A DNA stretch of 62,913 nt, the filler included, from Lenisia limosa (Eukaryota; Protista; Breviatea): NCBI GenBank assembly GCA_001655205.1. It is 14 parts of 14 records of this genome, joined end to end, with 100 filler letters (N's around TTAATTAATTAA, not from the genome) between each part and the next. Parts side by side here need not be neighbours in the genome. Positions count along the whole stretch, not along the records: positions 34,914 to 40,943 come from LPNZ01011180.1; 13 more parts are not named here. One strand, written 5' to 3'. The notes under the pieces were generated by a model. That model did no database searches. It worked only from the letters and a program-made list of their open reading frames with translations, and was not told the origin of the DNA. How positions within the stretch are numbered: the stretch's first letter is position 1; each line of letters begins with the position of its first letter. Shown in pieces: positions 29,559 through 41,259 of the stretch. Position numbers and translations under genes: made by a program.

Positions 29559-32500
29559 ATGTCTGATCAAGATAGGGCACAGTCAGCCCGGTTTGTTGAG
29601 CTTTGTATTTCTTACCCCATGCTAACTGACCTTTAGGCCAAGGAACCAGCAGGGAAACCAACCTCATCCTCAAGGTAATGATTGTTCTGTATTTATTATC
29701 TTTTTTTTTGCTCAAACTAATTCCCAAATCCCGATATTTCCTGTGTTTTATTCAAATTTGGCTTTGATTAACTCATTTTAGCTTTCCAGCAAGGGGGGGT
29801 CCCCCCCCCTCACATCCAGAATCCTAGGGTAGGCCTTCTTGGATGTAAATTCCTTGCATAAGTTGATAGTGTTGATATTCACGATATTTTGAGCGGATTG
29901 TTTTCTTGTTTGACTGAGATTAGCAGCAGTATTTCAATCCTCGTCCTCAGCCAGGCTTCTATCCCGGTCCCCAGTACCCCATCCATCCTCAATATGGTAT
30001 GAAGGGCATTTTCTCAGCCTAAGCAACCCCATATATTACTTTCCCTCCTCATTCGCTTTTCTTTTACTTTGCTTCTGAACATCTTTCTTGTACTTATCAT
30101 CTAATTTGTATCAACATTCATACACCGTAGGGTTATAATCAGCAAGAAATATGTCCTAGTAAACAGAGGAAAAGGTGCTCATCATTATACATCCGACTCT
30201 GAGGAACTCTCCCTGCATTTCCATCAACAATCGTCAATTTGAAAATGTACATAGTTTACGCTTCTAGCCGGCTATAGTAACATGATGCCTGGACAACCTT
30301 CCGTGATGGTTCTGCCTCCTGTAAGCAATCTTGCCACCTTTTGTCTCCATATTAGTCAACCAACACTTCCATTCTTCCATCACAGACTGAGAATATCAAT
30401 AGTCTTGCCATGCTTTATTTTGGGTTGAAGTGAGCCCTTTCCAGATACATCTACAATTCTTCTTCTCTCTCTCCCGCGCTTACGCCAATATTTTTTATCG
30501 AAATTTCCTTCGTTTTACTACCCCACTTACACCCCGTAGCAGCAACCCCCTGTTGCCGCTCAGCCCCAGCCTAAGCCCGTCACCATCAAAATCACCGTAA
30601 GAGGGGGGGGGGGCTGTTTCGGGGCCAATATGGAGGGGAAAGTCAAGAATTTCAATGATAATGTATAAACAACTGGCCTGGCTTTGTTTTTGTTGTTATC
30701 AACCCTTGTGTGTTGTCCCTTCTAAAAAGGACCCCTACCCTTACCCCGTTCGTTTCAAAGTGGACAGTTTTTCCTTTTTACTCTCCCCCTGACCCTTACT
30801 CCTGAAGAAAAAGGGACCCCATGGACACGTTTCCTAGTTTAGCCCCTCACACACACGCACACCTCCTAAATCATCATGCACATTATTCCCTTCTTTTTTC
30901 CCCCTGTCACCCTTGCAGAAGAAGGACGGCTCTGACTGGAAGGCTCAGAACAGCCCCAGTGAACCTGCTTCCACCGCCACCGCCGCTCCCGCTGCTGCCC
31001 CGGGTGAGCGTTGCTATTAGATCTTCATCTCTATCCGAAAATAGACTGAATTTCTCTAAATCGTCGAATGATGTCGTATATAACGGTCTTTTTTTTGCCT
31101 AGTTACCTGGGCTTCTTTACCCCCATTAGCCCACACAAACTGATTCACTTTGAGACTTAGTGGTCTCTTCTCAGTCACCCCCCCCCCCCCNNNNNNNNNN
31201 NNNNNNNNNNNNNNNNNNNNNNNNNNNNNNNNNNNNNNNNNNNNNNNNNNNNNNNNNNNNNNNNNNNNNNNNNNNNNNNNNNNNNNNNNNNNNNNNNNNN
31301 NNNNNNNNNATTGTCCATCGTTTACCCACCAGCCCCGGTCGCCACCCCCCAGTTCAGCATCAAAACCCGTGATGGCAACGACTTTAAGCCGAAGGAAACG
31401 CTTGCCGCGTCCCCCAAAGCCGTGTCTGCCCCCGTCATCAAGCCCAACCCCAACAAGGTATCCCGAAGTGTTGAATCATATCCACTAGTGATGAGCATAT
31501 GACCAACTTTCGAGTCGAAATGATGAACGAAGATAGTGAATATCGAAATACTATGATATTATCATGTGTTGACCCAACTCCCATAATTACGATTCTTTGA
31601 CTATCATTGTTTAGTATATTTCTCTTCACCTGATCTTCATTCACCCCCCAGCCTGTTGTCACCAAGCCTACCGAGAAGGTTGTCAAGGAGACCAAGAAGG
31701 ACGCTGAGCCTGCCACGCCCAAGGAAAAGCCCATTAAAGTGGGATGGGTTTTGTCTATCGTTTAATTGTCGTTTTTATTGTCACTATTATAGTATATGAT
31801 AGATAATTCAATAATTCTTGGACGGCTTCGGCCAGATACAGCCTTGTTTTTTATTTCTCGTTGCTATGTATTATTATTGTTCTTTTCATTATATCAAGGC
31901 AATAATAATAATAATAACGACAGTATCGATATTTATCCAAGATTTATCGAGAAATTATGAACCGCACCTTGACGGAGTAGATCGAGGTCAAGCCCAAGGT
32001 TGAGCAGAAGAAGCCCGAAAAGAAGGCTGAAACCAAGCCCGCAGCCAAGCCTGCCAAGGCCGAGAAGCCTGCCCCCAAGACCGAGAAGACCGAAAAGCCT
32101 GCCGCTAAGGTTGAGAAGCCCGCTGAGAAGCCGGCTGTCAAGAAGGCTGAGCCTGTCGTTGCTGGTATGAGGCTTCTTTCTGTGACTCCTTGCATTCAAT
32201 GTGTGAATNNNNNNNNNNNNNNNNNNNNNNNNNNNNNNNNNNNNNNNNNNNNNNNNNNNNNNNNNNNNNNNNNNNNNNNNNNNNNNNNNNNNNNNNNNNN
32301 NTCCAATTGAGTTGACATACTGTAAGGAGAACGCTATTTCAAACTTCAACTTTCAAATGTGGCCATCTTATTAATTACACTGACTGACTTCTTTCATTGT
32401 TCTCATAAACAGTTATTTTTGTGATATTTCTTTTGCTACCGAAACGTTTCTGTCAAAACAATCAACTTATGCCAGTTCAATCGCAAACCCCTGACCATCC

Positions 32501-34913: not shown

Positions 34914-34969
34914 AAAACAAACAAAGCCCAGGTCAGTCGCTTCTGCAGCACCGAATCCCATCACTCCAG
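34914..34969 (-). mobile_element. Family C, 5' part (cut by contig end)
   Basis: Minus strand: gcacg-ctggagtgatgggattcggtgctgcagaagcgac; sense to actinin. Confidence 0.85.
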
Positions 34970-35007
34970 CGTGCAAGATCTTAGCTCCTCCCCGCTCGAC
35001 CATACCT

Positions 35008-35093
35008 TCAGTTTCACTTCGGTTCGAAAGAGAACGGTAAAATATCGATAATATCAAAGAAATATCGAAAATTCGAACCGAAGTGAAGCCTTA
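35008..35093 (-). mobile_element. MITE family A, A1
   Basis: ttcacttcggttcgaaa..ttcgaaccgaagtgaagcctta; actinin intron. Confidence 0.85.
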
Positions 35094-35113
35094 GCTATAC
35101 CCCCCCCCTCTAC

Positions 35114-38100
35114 CTTGATCTCAGCGATCTTGGCGTCGTTCGCGGCCTGAACCTCCTCAACACGGGTGGCCACGCCCTCGGAGCGGCTGGTCAGAGTCTC
35201 CGGCTCGGGGTAGCGCNNNNNNNNNNNNNNNNNNNNNNNNNNNNNNNNNNNNNNNNNNNNNNNNNNNNNNNNNNNNNNNNNNNNNNNNNNNNNNNGAGAG
35301 AGAGAAGGAAACTTATGAAACAAACTAAAAAAAACTGAAAAAAAGAAGCCAAAGGAAGAAGAAAAGCAATATCAAAGTTGGAGGAAAGGCCAACCTGGGT
35401 GGCAGCACGCTCGCCCTGGGTCTTGAAAGCGGTGATTTCAGCAGCACCTGGGGGTAAAAGGGTGGGGGAGGTGTCACCAAGGTCCGTGGAATGAACATGT
35501 AGAATATCTGGCCGAAGCCGTCCTCATCGTATAACAGCACTTTTCGCCATATTTTTATGAAAGGGGCTGTGAGTTTGCTTATGTGATTTTATGTTGTTAT
35601 GAGGGCTTCACATCGGTTCGAAAAATGACTGAATTTCTCGTATTTCTTCGAAAATTATCGATATGTTACCGGTATTTTTCGAGCCAAAGTGAAGCCAAAG
35701 TGGAAATGTCTCACCTTATTGAGTAGTATTTCCGCGTTAAAGCTATTACGCCTCTGGGTAAAAGAAGAAAACATTCATCTCATACTATGTCATATTATTT
35801 CATATACTAGCAACATATTATCTCATATGATGTCAAAATGAGAAGGTATTGGGTGTTTGTGTCTGTTGTTATATGTTATAAAGCTGAGTCTTTAGTCCAC
35901 TCTGTCTCTTATAACTCTTCATGGCGTAAAAATGAATATATAATTCCATCCCAGCCTACTGGACTCGAGGGATCTGATCTGAGCCTGGCAGAGGGCAACG
36001 GATGACTCGGGTGTGACGGCATTGATGGATTCCTCCTAAATGGTAAGGCAAAATGGTTGATGAATGTAAGGGGAAACAGTAATAAAATGTCACTAAATCT
36101 GCGTAATGCTCACCTTAGTGTTAAGTCCCTCCTCAGCCTTGGTAGAAACGCGTTCGAAGTTGGCAACAAGGGTGTCACGCTTGGCCTGGGGGGTGTAAAA
36201 TTGGAGAATGTAAAAAACAAAAAAGGCCGAATCATCTTTGTTGGCTGACAACACACAAGGATTGATAACAACAAAACAAACAANNNNNNNNNNNNNNNNN
36301 NNNNNNNNNNNNNNNNNNNNNNNNNNNNNNNNNNNNNNNNNNNNNNNNNNNNNNNNNNNNNNNNNNNNNNNNNNNNNNNNNNNNNNNNNNNNNNNNNNNN
36401 NAAAAACAAGCAATAACTAACACGAGCAACCAACACCTTGGGGGGGGGGGTAAATGCATCTATTGAACCTGGAAATCGGTCCTACCAAATTCCCCCTTAT
36501 CTTACCTGGAGAGCGGTCTCGACGCGGATTTCGTTGTCGATTTCCTTCTCGCGGGCACAGAGAGCTTGCCACTTAGCCTCGAGGGTTGCGGGGGCCACCA
36601 TCTCGGTGGGGACGTAGGGCTTACGGTTGTTAACCTGTCCGGAGTGAATCGTGCCGAGGGCTTCCCTGCGATCCGAAAAAGACCGTTAAAATATCGAGAT
36701 ATTCAGTCTTTTTTGGGACCATAGAAGCCCTAATTGTGATAGACAGACAGAACTCAAAAAACAACCCGAAGCATGCAATTTTATGCGACATGATAAGAAA
36801 AGACTTGACAATTCTTATGGAAACAATCTTAGAATTAGACTCTCGACTATTCACACGGAAAACGCTCATCAGAATCCCCCCCCCCCCNNNNNNNNNNNNN
36901 NNNNNNNNNNNNNNNNNNNNNNNNNNNNNNNNNNNNNNNNNNNNNNNNNNNNNNNNNNNNNNNNNNNNNNNNNNNNNNNNNNNNNNNNNNNNNNNNNNNN
37001 NNNNNNNNNNNNNNNNNNNNNNNNNNNNNNNNNNNNNNNNNNNNNNNNNNNNNNNNNNNNNNNNNNNNNNNNNNNNNNNNNNNNNNNNNNNNNNNAAATC
37101 AACCTGGGGTGAGTGTGAGTGTATGTATTAACCCCCGCCCTCTATAGTAAATCCCGCACCCTTAAACTTCTCGGCGGCGGCGTTGACTTCGTCAGTGGAG
37201 TTGCCGAGAGGGTAGTCCTCAAACTCAGCTGTCTTGTTATCCATCCACAGGGAGAGCTACGGCGTGATAAGGGAAAATGATTGGAAGCTCCCCAGGTTAA
37301 ACTTGAAGGTTATAATTGACTGTGTTCTTCAAATACTGTTCCCTCCTTTCACCCCCCCCCCCACAGCGCCGGCNNNNNNNNNNNNNNNNNNNNNNNNNNN
37401 NNNNNNNNNNNNNNNNNNNNNNNNNNNNNNNNNNNNNNNNNNNNNNNNNNNNNNNNNNNNNNNNNNNNNNNNNNNNNNNNNNNNNNNNNGTAGTCAGCGG
37501 GTGTTGATGATAACGGGTGTGTAAACTTATAACTAGGGCTCTGTGTAAATAATTATTAATTGCACAATTTGAAGTGAGACCTATTATCATAGGAACGCCA
37601 TTTCAGACACTTTAATTTCAACTTTTGTCAATTAATTGCTTCAAAAAATCAATTACACGGAGCCCAAAACCCAACAGCAGTCATCTTGGCGTTCTCACGG
37701 CCGAAGCGGTTGAAGTACTCCGAAACCTGGGGTGGTAAATGACGCGCTGCGAATTTCAGTCCGCTACAAATCCTTTGTTTGTTTTATTAAGCGAAATAAT
37801 ATTCATTAGAAATCTAGGGAAACAAATAAATACATAGGGATCCCGTTGTTTCTCCTCTCTATTCATAACATTCCTCCAAAAAAGAGCGAAGGGAGAAGTC
37901 CCACCTGAGTCATGATGGATCTGTCGTCGGCAACCTCAACGTCCTCGGCGTCCATGAGGCGTGGAATGTCAAGCTCGTTCTCGGCCACATCGAAGGCGTA
38001 CTGGGGAGTAAAATTGGAAAAGTTATGAGAGAAAAAAAAGAAGCCCAAAATCAACTCTCATTACTGACCACACACGAAAGTTGGTAATAACAAAAACAAC

Positions 38101-40212
38101 GCTCAGGCCAGTTGCTTCGGCAACACCAGATCCCATCACTCCAGCATACGGTAAAAAGAGAAGATGGCAGAATAAAAGGTTTTGATTGGTGTACCATATG
38201 TATGATTGAGAAGACTAATTCTCCATTTTATTTGAGCCACACTGTGTAGAGAGTTGAACAAGGCCTTGAACCATTGCATACCTTGATGTTCTCAATGCTG
38301 TCGTCTCCAACTTGCTCGTAGTTGAGGAGGTTCTTACTGGAACATGAGAAGCCACATTGTTCATTTGTTGGTGTAAAGGTACTCTCTTTAGTCACCCAAT
38401 ACAAGGAATATCTCAAAATATCTTCAAAAACAAGCATAAGTGATAATAAAAAGGACCCAGCTCAGCAGGCCGCGAACAGCTTACCGATGGTAGTGGATGA
38501 GGGCGCAGAAGGCGCGGCCGTCATGCCAGGAGCTGTGGAAATTCTTGACGTTGACATCGCTGTAGCCCTGGGTGGAGTAAAATTGAAAAATTATGAAATA
38601 AAAAAAAAAAGCCCAAAATCAACTCTGTTGACTGACAACACACAAGGATTGATAACAGCAAAACAAACAAAGCCCAGACCAGTCGCTTCTGTAGCACCGC
38701 ATCCCATCACTAAGGGTCTGGATGGGGATTTGGTGGAGGCAGCAACATTTCCACCCATTGCGGCCAAGAGGTTGAATGTTTGCACAGTATGGAGTAATCT
38801 GATATTGGCTCTATGGACACTCCGCTATTTATTGACAAGCCTACCCTAATCTTATCGTACCCCAACTTACGGCAGTGCAGCGCTGGACCCAGAGGAGAAG
38901 AGCCTCCTAAAAGCAATAAGAATGCACTATAGTCTGCAACTACACTGTACATAATTGGCAATGTGAAGAACAATGCCAAGACCAAGCCAACAAACAAGCC
39001 GGGGACGGCAAATTACAGACATTTGACCCTCTTCCTTCATAGATGATGACATATCATATGCAATGAGAATGCACACAGCTTTCTGCGCGCCTCCAAAGCC
39101 ACCAACCTTAGCACTGAGATCCTCAATGGAAATTTCGGCAATAGAATAACGAAGAATGATGATCCCTGTGAGGTCAATTGGGATATAATATGGGGTGGGG
39201 GGTGGAGGGTAATGAAACAAAAAAAAAACTCTGTTGGCTAAACATTTGGGGATGCTTTTACTTTGCAATAAAGACGAAGTTACTTTTGAATTACAAAAGC
39301 CCCCACAAACAGACAAGGCCGAGGATAAGCTTGAGGTTTCCATCGCAGACATCTAAAACAGTAAGGACAGGCATCGAACCATTTGCCTTACATACAACTC
39401 TGTACACACAGTTTCCTACATGCCTATATTTATCAATCTACATAATTGATGAACCCCTTTTAAAGAACAACACAAAGACCCCTAAGGACCATGCGGCTAT
39501 TGTCAACTTATGAGAAATGACCCGCCACGTATACACGATCTTGATTGACTTACCTTCGGCACCGATTCCCTCGAGGCGAACAGACTGGCTGATGAAGTTC
39601 AGGCAAACGGAAAGGTTTTCAATCTGAATTGGTGAGCATTATTAGAATTTATTGCTTGGCCGCAACAATACCAACCTTCTGGATACGCATTCTTGGCTTC
39701 ATGTTGATCTAGAAGGTGAGAGAGGAAACAGTTAATATCACAAAAGCTGTCTAAAATTCAAACCTTGAAGCTAAGAGGCTCTCCGTTAAGAGAGGTGAGG
39801 AGATGGAAGAGCATAACACCGTCGTTGAGGTCATCCTTGAGTGTCTCAATCTTTTGTCCAGCTTTCTTCAAATGGGAGTTGACCCTGTAAATTAATAAGC
39901 ATCTAAGGTAATCCGTTCAGTGAAGTAGTCCTATCAAGGTTCACGGAAAAAAAAAAATCAATCCTTGACAATACCACCCTGCGGAATCTCACCAGTTAGT
40001 GAAAGTCTAAATTGTGAGCAAAGAAAATCCAATACAAGAATATTTTTTCTCGGAAGAACAAATCTTACTTTCTTTTGAACCTCCTCCCATTGTCTGTCAA
40101 GAAGACGAGCTCCCTCTGAAATCAATCAGAAGAAGTAACTCAGATTAAAGCAAAAAAAGAGGTATTTACTAGACAAACCTTCTTGGGGTCTGTTACGGAT
40201 ATCTTCGGTCAT
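35114..40212 (-). CDS. Alpha-actinin-like protein (CH1-CH2 actin-binding domain plus spectrin-like rod; 3' truncated)
   Basis: Spliced: [107 protein letters not shown]; rod [17 protein letters not shown]. Confidence 0.9.
35601..35698 (+). mobile_element. MITE family A, A1
   Basis: Full-length, antisense core relative to actinin. Confidence 0.85.
36186..36283 (-). mobile_element. Family C ending at actinin acceptor
   Basis: ..ttctccaattttacaccccccAG then GCC AAG CGT; 5' part masked. Confidence 0.85.
36657..36732 (-). mobile_element. MITE family A, A2
   Basis: TIRs with inverted core; actinin intron. Confidence 0.85.
37534..37666. mobile_element. MITE family D
   Basis: GGGCTC(T/C)GTGTAA..TTACACGGAGCCC TIR; homologous copy at 26207-26340. 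Confidence 0.8.
38001..38149 (-). mobile_element. Family C, full copy ending at actinin acceptor
   Basis: Minus strand: GTATG-ctggagtgatggga..ttttccaattttactccccAG then TAC GCC TTC. Confidence 0.9.
38568..38712 (-). mobile_element. Family C ending at actinin acceptor
   Basis: agtgatgggatgcggtgctacagaagcgactgg..ttttactccacccAG then GGC TAC AGC. Confidence 0.9.
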
Positions 40213-40432
40213 ACTACTGAAAAACAAAGAGCAAAAAAGTGTTTTCCCCAAAAAAAAAATCCAGTTTATATAGCCATTTTAATGGGGTGGATATAATTAG
40301 CCTTTTTGGGATTTTGAAATTTTTATTGATGGCCTTTTATGAGACATAGCTTTCGTTTTAAGTAGAAGTGATATAGTTTGAGTTTATAAAGAAGGAAGTT
40401 TCCGAAGAAAACACAGACGAGTTGTGTTTATA

Positions 40433-40613
40433 ATGGCGGATAAGGTTTGTTTGGTGCCTTCTTGGCATTTATTTTAACCAAATAGATCCAAAATGGAAGT
40501 CCACAGGCGGACGAACCTCTCCCGATAAATGGGTAAGTTGTTCATACGTCATTCTCTGACTTTCTAGAACACCCGAATACCTTCGTTTCAAAGAACAAGT
40601 CCCCTTTAAAAAG
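40433..40613 (+). CDS. 5' exons of a hypothetical gene divergent from alpha-actinin
   Basis: Three short exons splice in frame: MADK-IQNGSPQADEPLPING-TPEYLRFKEQVPFKK. Confidence 0.4.
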
Positions 40614-41259
40614 GTATGTATATCCCTCCAATGTTTTCACCAAGCGGCTTGATAGCATTTGCTTGCCGTTTTGGGGATATTTAAAAAAATCAACAAACTC
40701 AGTTCCAAGAGAACTGATATTGGACGGAGGGAGTTAGCGCTATTCTGCATGTATATTTTTCTTTCCTCATAAATGGATATTTAGCTTTAGTGTATGAGTA
40801 TTTCGTTCACTTTTTGTCATTTATTTTGTCACTGACATTCGAGGAGCATCGGCCATATTTATGTACACAGTCTGTCACTCATCTAATTTGCCTCAGGTCT
40901 CAGTTAAACCTATCCTATATAGCAATGAGAAATAAAAAAAATANNNNNNNNNNNNNNNNNNNNNNNNNNNNNNNNNNNNNNNNNNNNTTAATTAATTAAN
41001 NNNNNNNNNNNNNNNNNNNNNNNNNNNNNNNNNNNNNNNNNNNGCGGTGCGGCCATCCTAAAAGTAATCAAAACAATAACAATAAGAAGTAATCACAATA
41101 AAACAAAACAGTAACAATAAAAAGTCATCCAATAACAATAACAATCAAAAACAATAATAATAATAACAATAACAACAAAAAACAATCAAAGGTAGTCAAA
41201 AGCAATATCTAGATAACACACAATATCCCCTCCTCTCTACCCCATGTCTAGGATATAAC

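What the first reader, a model, noticed from the sequence alone, without database searches (positions are those of the whole stretch)
38001..38149. Family C: a ~145-bp dispersed element that supplies the 3' splice site of its host introns (introner-like)
Seen: homologous copies end exactly at the acceptor AG in four unrelated genes: actinin (36186, 38001, 38568), CHFR-like (18672, 19486), REJ gene (28013) and the contig-2 gene (6354, 3' end only). The eIF4G copy runs into a mask at the expected position. Every copy in a gene of known direction is in sense, while family A in the same introns occurs in both orientations and mid-intron. The ends form an imperfect inverted repeat (CTGGAGTG..ACTCCCCAG/CACCCCCAG), and the 38001 copy has a donor-like GTATG just before its left end (GCACG, TTACG in two others), so the full unit could itself be a 149-nt GT-AG intron. 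Known: introners in Micromonas, Aureococcus and fungi create introns by carrying splice sites. Unusual here: the 5' parts of the host introns are unrelated, so C seems to have entered at, and taken over, existing acceptors rather than making whole new introns. Inference: either 3'-splice-site-targeted insertion (possibly spliceosome-coupled) or strong post-insertion selection. Exceptions: a mid-intron fragment at ~30675-30720, and the 58129 copy whose downstream AG leads to stops.
Basis: partly seen in the sequence, partly recalled or inferred. Interest (0 to 1): 0.9.

Follow-up and report, generated by a model that had tools for sequence, protein, structure and literature searches.

The report
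Intron-shaped repeat that supplies splice acceptors
A 150-base repeat present in roughly ten thousand copies sits, always in the sense direction, at the 3' end of introns of unrelated genes and provides the branch site, C-rich tract and AG that the cell actually uses for splicing, so it is an introner-like mobile element with an unusual 3'-anchored build.

Summary
In the alpha-actinin gene on the minus strand, family C copies at 38001-38149, 38568-38711 and 36186-36283 end exactly at acceptor AGs, and RNA contigs show those AGs are used. DNA contig depth and 5,385 matching contigs put the family at roughly 10^4 copies. In 72 kb of the same organism I found 61 copies, 60 of them co-oriented.

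Of the first 46 copies, 35 reach the 3' end. About 26 of those 35 run into TTTTAC + C-run + AG followed by exon-like sequence.

The full consensus is an intron-shaped unit, GTAYGCTGGAGTG...CCAATTTTAC-C(4-16)-AG. There is no Rfam match and no stable fold.

Copies are often 5'-truncated (19 of 35) but almost never 3'-truncated. They form head-to-tail partial tandems and are typically preceded by another acceptor-like tail. No intact copy is a stand-alone intron, yet several host introns begin with C's own first 6-21 bases.

Best reading: an introner family copied from its 3' end, probably through RNA, and later split or nested by further insertions. The mechanism is inferred, the organism is unidentified, and prior description cannot be excluded.

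The parts
38001..38154 (-). Full-length family C copy including the GTATG just upstream of CTGGAGTG. It forms the 3' 149-154 nt of actinin intron 38001-38281 and ends ...CCAATTTTACTCCCCAG at the used acceptor.
   Evidence: Alignment. nhmmer E 1e-47. RNA contig exon ends at 38000.
38568..38711 (-). Full-length family C copy with a decayed 5' end (CTTAGTG for CTGGAGTG). It forms the 3' part of intron 38568-38870 and is preceded by an acceptor-like CCCCATCCAG.
   Evidence: The RNA loose end at 38567 joins 38871-38900. DNA depth is up to 658,000 against 32 for single copy.
36186..36283 (-). 3' two thirds of a family C copy, cut by the N run 36284-36401. It ends at the used acceptor of intron 36186-36505.
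   Evidence: RNA joint 36184->36505 (cut +1).
34914..34972 (-). 5' 59 nt of a family C copy (GCACGCTGGAGTG...), cut by the piece edge. It lies in the intron whose donor is at 35113.
   Evidence: RNA contig exon 35113-35216 with a loose end into the next exon.
38155..38281 (-). Single-copy 5' part of intron 38001-38281. It begins GTATGC (the same hexamer as C's start) and ends with a tail-like TCTCTTTTTACC. It is possibly a 126-nt insertion into C with a 6-bp target duplication.
   Evidence: Read from the sequence. No repeats found. Depth table.
38712..38870 (-). Single-copy 5' part of intron 38568-38870, with donor GTAAGTTGGGG.
   Evidence: No other BLAST hit. Depth 32.
35943..35959 (-). Donor of intron 35448-35959, GTAGGCTGGGATGGAAT. 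It matches C's first 20 nt with a 3-nt deletion, so here a C-type 5' end is used as the 5' splice site.
   Evidence: Motif scan. RNA joint 35445->35958 (cut +2).
35448..35468 (-). Acceptor tail CCCCCACCCTTTTACCCCCAG of intron 35448-35959. It is the same TTTTAC + C-run + AG module as C's end.
   Evidence: RNA joint.
36437..36457 (-). Internal acceptor-like tail GCATTTAC + C11 + AAG, directly followed by GTG, inside intron 36186-36505. It looks like the end of an older short intron upstream of the C-bearing part.
   Evidence: Read from the sequence.
37727..37745 (-). Acceptor ...CATTTACCACCCCAG of intron 37727-37904. It has the same tail type without a recognisable C body.
35006..35098 (.). Family A palindromic miniature element (arms GGCTTCACTTCGGTTCGAA), nested between the donor at 35113 and the C copy. 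A second copy lies at 35604-35696.
   Evidence: Inverted repeats I2 and I3. Many hits on both strands.

Best explanation
Family C is an introner-type mobile element. It is an intron-shaped 150-nt unit, GTAYGCTGGAGTG ... CCAATTTTAC, then a run of 4-16 C, then AG, present about 10^4 times and only in the sense strand of transcribed genes.

Shown: its 3' end is the branch-site-like TTTTAC, the C-rich tract and the AG that the spliceosome uses in at least three actinin introns. The same end abuts exon-like sequence in about 26 of 35 sampled copies, including a kinesin exon starting VSYLEIY.

Shown: copies keep the 3' end and lose the 5' end at scattered points. They occur as head-to-tail partial tandems whose junction is TTTTAC (plus 0 to n C, usually no AG) followed by GTACGCTGG. 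They are often directly preceded by another such tail.

Inferred: new copies are made from the 3' end of an RNA template, most simply the excised or unspliced intron RNA itself, whose ends are set by splicing. Copying would be primed where the C-rich tail can anneal, that is at existing TTTTAC-C(n)-AG acceptor tails and occasionally in exons. This adds a fresh acceptor module to an intron or creates a new intron.

Inferred: the unrelated 5' parts are a mixture of older intron sequence with its old tail and later insertions that split C a few bases after its own GT. That would explain why several host introns still start with C's first 6-21 bases.
For: - **RNA-confirmed acceptors:**
- **Copy number:** summed depth of 3-6.6e5 against 32, and 5,385 contigs.
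- **Orientation:** 61 copies in 72 kb, 60 co-oriented. Gene strand is known for actinin and kinesin-2.
- **Truncation pattern:** 35 hits reach the 3' end, 16 full-length and 19 truncated at model positions 15-102. Only 5 hits keep the 5' end without the 3' end; 2 of these are contig edges and 3 are tandem duplications.
- **3' contexts:**
- **Upstream flank:** carries a C-run in 13 of 44 copies against a 4.9% background (p 4e-5 and 7e-4). It resembles C's own tail with z above 4 in about 12 copies.
- **Genome-wide flank consensus:** T-rich + CCCC + TACGCTGG from 123 contigs, and tandem junctions such as TTTCATTTTTAC|GTACGCTGG.
- **Not a TIR or structured element:** no significant TIR and fold z = +0.5. 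No Rfam match.
- **C-like donors at real exon boundaries:**, one of them RNA-supported.
- **Intron positions:** C/D-tail acceptors occur only at kinesin intron positions not shared with other lineages.
Against: - No reverse transcriptase, partner element or presence/absence polymorphism was seen; only one DNA and one RNA run exist.
- Loss of 5' ends with kept 3' ends could also come from selection, because deleting the acceptor is lethal to splicing while deleting the 5' part is harmless.
- No intact copy in the sample is a stand-alone intron (0 of about 20), which is odd for an element supposed to create introns.
- Target duplications are not consistent.
- The C-run could be a species-wide acceptor preference rather than a copying scar.
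- Loci L001-L012 were found through a C-derived ORF, so they are enriched for C, and their exons are mostly inferred from composition.
Confidence: 0.55

Rival explanations
1. C is a non-autonomous DNA transposon (MITE-like introner, as in Micromonas, Aureococcus or Symbiodinium) that carries its 3' splice site and prefers C-rich acceptor regions as targets. Truncated and tandem copies are products of abortive gap repair.
For: Most classified introners are TIR DNA elements, and some carry the 3' splice site (PMC9860276, PMC12130899). Other small palindromic elements are abundant in the same introns. Upstream flanks are enriched in C-runs, which could be a target preference.
Against: The terminal inverted repeat is not above chance. 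There is no consistent target duplication. Orientation is strictly sense. The 5'-only truncation series and head-to-tail partial tandems are not typical of MITEs.
Confidence: 0.17
2. One reading: C enters pre-existing introns exactly at their 3' splice site by a spliceosome-coupled reaction (reverse splicing of the excised C intron at or next to acceptors) and takes over the acceptor. It does not create introns.
For: The element's ends equal splice sites (GTAYG...AG). Old acceptor-like tails, some with AG, lie directly upstream of C: window 38712-38721 CCCCATCCAG, 36437-36457, L007 3790-3806 and L001 1395-1408. The 5' parts of host introns are unique. Reverse splicing has been proposed for Micromonas introners (PMC4540971).
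Against: Most upstream tails lack AG. Reverse splicing should insert whole units, not a 5'-truncation series. Several host introns start with C's own 5' end. C/D-tail introns in kinesin-2 sit at unshared, probably young positions.
Confidence: 0.15
3. There is no targeting at all. C inserts at random, or spreads by ectopic gene conversion between intron ends, and only sense copies ending on an acceptor survive selection. TTTTAC-C(n)-AG is simply this species' preferred acceptor.
For: C-runs precede the AG in 8 of 24 supported introns, some without a C body. Selection would also explain why 3' ends are kept.
Against: A random insertion almost never lands with its last base on an acceptor, yet about 26 of 35 sampled 3' ends do. 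The required number of failed insertions would be enormous for about 10^4 survivors. Intergenic or antisense copies are nearly absent from the sample.
Confidence: 0.08

Closest known systems
Introners / introner elements of Micromonas pusilla and Aureococcus (Worden 2009; Simmons 2015, PMC4540971; Huff 2016, from my own knowledge) and the 1,093 families of Gozashti et al. (PMC9860276, PMC12130899)
   Same: Hundreds to thousands of near-identical copies lie inside transcription units, in sense orientation, and are removed by the spliceosome. The element carries splice signals. Some families carry the 3' splice site.
   Different: Known introners make up the whole intron, and the screens require similarity at both intron ends. 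Intact C copies here occupy only the 3' 145-150 nt of 280-510-nt introns. They show a 5'-truncation series, a variable C-run tail and tail-to-head tandems. No TIR or TSD was found.
Fungal introner-like elements (van der Burgt 2012, from my own knowledge; cited in PMC4540971)
   Same: Intron-sized units without transposon hallmarks that multiply within genes and decay into ordinary introns.
   Different: Fungal ILEs are stand-alone introns with predicted stable structure. C has no fold signal (z = +0.5) and is not stand-alone in the sample.
SINE / non-LTR retroposons and retroposed intronic snoRNAs (snoRTs, PMC1687206)
   Same: Intact 3' ends with variable 5' truncation, a homopolymer tail of variable length, partial tandems, and for snoRTs a sense bias in introns.
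   Different: C has no tRNA, 7SL, 5S or snoRNA head (no Rfam match). Its tail is C-rich and ends in AG instead of poly-A. No partner reverse transcriptase was identified.
Antisense Alu exonisation in primates (from my own knowledge)
   Same: A repeat's pyrimidine-rich end plus AG serves as a 3' splice site.
   Different: There it creates rare alternative exons by accident. Here the repeat end is the constitutive acceptor of thousands of introns and is in sense.
Possible prior description in the orthonectid Intoshia linei genome paper (Mikhailov et al. 2016, Curr Biol; the paper is cited in PMC6543705)
   Same: I recall, from memory only and unverified, an abundant intron-associated repeat near 3' splice sites being reported there. 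The run dates (2016), DNA plus polyA RNA, roughly 55-nt basic introns and animal-type genes would fit.
   Different: The held library could not confirm this. The organism of this window was not identified; the best kinesin-2 matches are about 60% identical, to Fabomonas, sponges and Pygsuia. Gozashti 2022 lists Intoshia_linei without introners.

Membership tests
Introners (intron-generating mobile elements) | Many highly similar copies inside introns of unrelated genes | tested here: met
   61 copies in 72 kb across actinin, kinesin-2, a dynein-like gene and other genes. 5,385 DNA contigs match, and depth is about 10^4 times single copy.
Introners (intron-generating mobile elements) | Sense orientation within the transcription unit and removal by splicing | tested here: met
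   60 of 61 copies are co-oriented, and the strand equals the gene strand for actinin and kinesin-2. RNA contigs skip the C-bearing introns.
Introners (intron-generating mobile elements) | The element supplies at least one splice site | tested here: met
   The 3' splice site at C's last base is used at 38001, 38568 and 36186. A C-type 5' end is used as the donor at 35959.
Introners (intron-generating mobile elements) | The element accounts for the whole intron (similarity from both intron ends) | tested here: not met
   None of about 20 copies with an intact 5' end abuts an exon. Host introns are 280-510 nt with unique 5' parts. Only C's first 6-21 nt recur at 3-4 host donors.
Introners (intron-generating mobile elements) | Intron positions are lineage-specific or polymorphic (evidence of gain) | tested here: inconclusive
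   In kinesin-2, C/D-tail acceptors occur at 4 of 9 unshared positions and 0 of 4 positions shared with two sponges and a brown alga. The sample is small, orthology is uncertain, and there are no population data.
TIR DNA transposon / MITE | Terminal inverted repeats and target-site duplication | tested here: not met
   The TIR score of 5 is reached by 84% of shuffles. There is no recurrent duplication at the copy boundaries.
SINE / TPRT-type retroposon | 3' ends intact with variable 5' truncation, and a variable homopolymer tail | tested here: met
   19 of 35 copies that keep the 3' end are 5'-truncated. Stand-alone 3'-truncated copies number 0-3. The C-run is 4-16 nt long.
SINE / TPRT-type retroposon | Head derived from a small RNA with an internal promoter (tRNA, 7SL, 5S) | tested here: not met
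   No Rfam match at E up to 1 over 37496-40943.
SINE / TPRT-type retroposon | Partner element encoding reverse transcriptase with the same 3' tail | not testable with these tools
   The organism's whole assembly cannot be searched. No RT domain appears among the called genes of L001-L012.

The most novel reading that the evidence does not exclude
The mobile unit is the excised spliceosomal intron RNA itself, with ends defined by splicing (GTAYG...AG or a tail trimmed back to the branch site). It is reverse-transcribed from its 3' end after annealing of its C-rich tail to acceptor tails of other introns. Introns would then seed new acceptor modules, tandem intron units and occasionally whole new introns. 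That would be an RNA-level, self-targeting route of intron growth and gain, distinct from the DNA-transposon introners described so far.
Probability: 0.3. Interest if true: 0.85.

Novelty: new variant of a known kind. Interest (0 to 1): 0.66.

Why it matters
How new introns and new splice sites arise is a long-standing question. The only mechanism shown to act on a genomic scale is insertion of introners that form whole introns. Here, one repeat family furnishes the working branch site, pyrimidine tract and AG of what may be thousands of introns, while occupying only their 3' ends. Its copy anatomy points to 3'-anchored, possibly RNA-templated, copying. Screens that demand similarity at both intron ends would miss such families, so their frequency may be underestimated. 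If the excised-intron retroposition reading holds, it would give direct sequence evidence for an intron-propagation route that has been proposed but hardly documented.

Tried and rejected
- **Metagenome scan:** a scan for a 22-base C pattern found nothing.
- **Sequencing runs:** only two public runs hold the locus, so no presence/absence polymorphism test was possible.
- **Organism identification failed:**
  - The diplonemid lead had no support.
  - The best matches of a kinesin-2 exon are about 60% identical, to Fabomonas, Gefionella, sponges and Pygsuia.
  - A 364-aa coiled-coil ORF found only itself.
  - Pfam on long ORFs was uninformative.
  - Lenisia and Intoshia were considered, and neither was confirmed.
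- **Literature:** searches for a prior description ('Spirit', Intoshia) found nothing in the held library.
- **Structural hypotheses rejected:** the terminal inverted repeat and a stable RNA fold, and an origin from a small RNA.
- **Upstream exon intronised by C:** rejected, because the actinin CH2 sequence is contiguous across introns 7 and 9 compared with human alpha-actinin, as I remember that sequence.
- **5' parts as another repeat family:** rejected for introns 7 and 9, whose 5' parts are single copy.
- **Correction:** my first gene model joined 39166-39553 as one intron. The RNA contig length shows a 43-nt micro-exon at 39311-39353 inside it.


Full report
**What is in the piece.** The usable piece (34914-40943) carries the N-terminal half of an alpha-actinin gene on the minus strand. 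The start Met is at 40212, and exons run down to 35113. The gene has at least 19 introns.

Introns near the 5' end are 52-78 nt long with ordinary acceptors. Further down they are 145-512 nt and full of repeats.

Four N runs (35217-35295, 36284-36401, 36888-37095, 37374-37489) are flanked by G or C homopolymers and look like assembly gaps.

**The observation.** Three copies of family C align over about 145 nt and end exactly at an intron's last base: 38001-38149, 38568-38711 and 36186-36283, the last cut by a gap. A fourth copy, 34914-34972, holds only the 5' part because the piece ends there.

A polyA RNA run of the same study (X1) gives spliced contigs that confirm the three acceptors.
- The joint 36184->36505 (cut +1) gives intron 36186-36505.
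- An exon piece ends at 38000, and the record's own coordinates leave exactly 55 letters for exon 38282-38336. Intron 38001-38281 is therefore removed in one piece, and the internal GTATG at 38154-38150 is not used as a donor in that contig.
- A loose end at 38567 continues with 38871-38900, giving intron 38568-38870.

The 5' parts of these introns are single copy. Their depth is 32-33, the same as flanking exons, and they have no BLAST hit elsewhere.

**How common it is.** The DNA run X2 holds 97% of the locus. In it, 5,385 contigs match the 38568 copy at 85% identity or more. Summed word depth over C reaches 3-6.6 x 10^5 against 32 for single-copy sequence (the same picture appears). This is a crude measure, but it puts the family at the order of 10^4 copies.

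A peptide read from C's accidental open frame found 14 called 'proteins', all from one ENA assembly, ERZ3820729. Their contigs (L001-L007, L011, L012; 66 kb) belong to the same organism or a very close one.

With a profile built from the copies, I found 61 hits in 72 kb. Sixty of them are co-oriented within their locus. For 50 of 51 non-index copies that gives P of about 2e-14.

Where the gene strand is known, C is in sense. Actinin is on the minus strand. Kinesin-2 in L004 is on the plus strand by tblastn.

**Anatomy.** The consensus is GTACGCTGGAGTGATGGGATGCGGTGCTGCAGAAGCGACTGGCCTGGGCTTTGTTTGTTTTGTTGTTATCAACCCTCGTGTGTTGTCAGCCAACAGAGTTGATTTTGGGCTTTTTTTGTTTCATAAATTTTCCAATTTTAC. It is followed by an optional T, a run of 4-16 C, and AG.

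The first five bases are GTACG or GTATG in five copies and decayed (GCACG, TTACG) in others. The unit is therefore intron-shaped.

- The inverted-repeat ends are not above chance: local score 5, reached by 84% of shuffles.
- The consensus has no fold signal: -35.2 kcal/mol against -37.1 +/- 3.8 for shuffles.
- There is no Rfam match at E up to 1.

**3' ends.** Of 35 hits that reach TTTTAC, about 26 continue with a short pyrimidine (mostly C) tract, then AG, then GC-rich, open, exon-like sequence. In L004 that sequence is the kinesin motor exon VSYLEIY.... The rest are interrupted by nested elements just after TTTTAC. The additional loci show the same pattern.

**5' ends and flanks.**
- Of the 35 hits that keep the 3' end, 16 are full-length. 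The other 19 start at scattered model positions between 15 and 102.
- Only five hits keep the 5' end without the 3' end. Two of them are contig or piece edges. Three are tandem duplications of the first 55 nt lying directly before a full copy.
- No intact 5' end abuts an exon.
- The 15 nt upstream of a copy contain a C-run in 13 of 44 cases, against 4.9% of windows overall (p = 4e-5 for full copies and 7e-4 for truncated ones).
- In about a dozen copies the upstream 36 nt are themselves a C-type tail...TTTGTTTCATAAATTTTCCAATTTTAC plus some C, mostly without AG (z above 4; sequences).
- Genome-wide, the consensus of 123 contigs beyond C's 5' end reads T-rich, then CCCC, then TACGCTGG. Several contigs show tail-to-head tandem junctions such as TTTCATTTTTAC|GTACGCTGG.

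**Do C copies invade old introns or make new ones?** There are two lines of evidence against pure invasion.

First, some host introns begin with C's own start.
- Window 35943-35959, GTAGGCTGGGATGGAAT, is the RNA-supported donor of intron 35448-35959. That intron also ends with a TTTTACCCCCAG tail.
- L004 4070, GTATGCTGGGAAGGACGGAAT, belongs to an intron that further inside holds C positions 26-80.
- L004 2593, GTACATGGG, is the donor of the kinesin intron whose 3' end is C.
- Window 38281, GTATGC, is repeated at 38154-38149 immediately before C. The 126 nt in between end in a tail-like TTTTTACC and look like an insertion with a 6-bp target duplication.

Second, I mapped the kinesin-2 introns of L004 against the gene structures of two sponges and a brown alga. 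The three or four shared positions have ordinary acceptors. C-type or related D-type tails occur only at unshared positions, 4 of 9. The numbers are small and paralogy is possible.

In favour of insertion at acceptors are the upstream tails. Some of them still carry AG:
- CCCCATCCAG before the 38568 copy.
- GCATTTAC-C11-AAG|GTG at 36437-36457.
- L007 3790-3806.
- L001 1395-1408.

I conclude that both processes occur.

**Mechanism.** The evidence fits copying that starts at the element's 3' end and often stops early, with the C-rich tail as the point of attachment. The relevant features are:
- sense-only copies;
- ends that coincide with splice sites;
- intact 3' ends with scattered 5' truncation;
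- a variable homopolymer tail;
- tail-to-head partial tandems;
- absence of TIR and TSD.

This is the anatomy of target-primed reverse transcription. The simplest template is intron RNA itself. The mechanism is inferred, not shown.

Selection against loss of the acceptor could also produce the truncation asymmetry. No reverse transcriptase or partner element was seen. A DNA transposon with a C-rich target preference, spliceosome-coupled insertion, and pure selection remain as rivals, in that order.

**Comparison with known systems.** Introners are known in about 200 species and derive from many transposon classes. Some carry the 3' splice site and borrow the 5' site from the target duplication (PMC9860276, PMC12130899). 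Micromonas introner elements share the sense-only, spliced-out behaviour, and reverse splicing has been proposed for them (PMC4540971).

Family C meets the defining behavioural features. It fails the 'whole intron' feature, which is also the criterion used in the published screens.

I therefore file it as a new variant of a known kind, with two caveats.
- The organism is unidentified.
- I have an unverified memory that the 2016 Intoshia linei genome paper described an abundant repeat near intron 3' ends. The held library could not confirm or refute this.

**Verdict.** The mechanism is open, though the sequence data constrain it. Interest is moderately high.

Noticed in passing
L004 3878-3985 and 4380-4488; L001 12370-12440; L006 3790-3835; L011 2300-2340: A second sense-only intron family ('D'), ...GGAGTTTCAGATTATTCGG...TTTACGCCAATATTCTTCATCGAAATNTCTTTCGTTTTAC + C-run + AG, ends at acceptors with the same tail as C. 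Different bodies thus share one 3' module, as SINE families share a LINE tail.
   Followed up: partly
window donors at 35113, 37364, 36505, 39310; L004 donors at 1403, 2206, 3132, 5173, 5429, 5625: Runs of 5-14 G lie within 35 nt after the donor in 6 of 24 supported introns (3% in intron interiors). C-runs precede the AG in 8 of 24 (6% in interiors). Many introns therefore have complementary G-rich 5' and C-rich 3' ends.
   Followed up: partly
window 35217-35295, 36284-36401, 36888-37095, 37374-37489: All four N runs are bordered by long G or C homopolymers or by a C copy. They look like assembly gaps caused by these repeats, and at least one hides exon sequence (19 RNA letters between 35216 and 35394).
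   Followed up: partly
window 39311-39353 (minus strand): A 43-nt actinin micro-exon (...[11 protein letters not shown]...) is needed to make the RNA contig length fit. Its donor is GTTTGTGGGGG.
   Followed up: partly
window 40370-40613 (plus strand): A divergently oriented neighbour gene has two tiny GT-AG introns of 41 and 35 nt, supported by an RNA contig (joints 40442->40484 and 40531->40567).
   Followed up: no
window 35006-35098, 35604-35696, 36662-36697; many places in L001-L007: Family A is a roughly 93-nt palindromic miniature element (arms GGCTTCACTTCGGTTCGAA). It is very abundant, lies mid-intron and hits on both strands. It is a conventional MITE-like contrast to C.
   Followed up: partly
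L005 1214-1408; L003 4-195; L001 12960-13118; L011 4437-4589: A recurrent C variant has its first 55 nt duplicated in tandem (...GGGCTTTGTTTGTT|GGAGTGATGGG...). It is seen in four loci, so it is probably a propagating subfamily rather than independent events.
   Followed up: no
L001 9066-9106 and 9850-9890: Two similar exon-like segments, each followed by a GT donor (...CTGTTGGAATGCAAGCTGCTGAATCCCTTCAG|GT and ...CTGTTGGCATGCAAGCGGCTCAATCCTTACAG|GT), lie about 780 nt apart. They could be a duplicated or mutually exclusive exon.
   Followed up: no
L004 (kinesin-2) against L008, L009, L010: Only 3-4 of 13 intron positions in the motor domain are shared with sponges or a brown alga, and most sponge introns are absent. 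This organism has had heavy intron turnover.
   Followed up: partly
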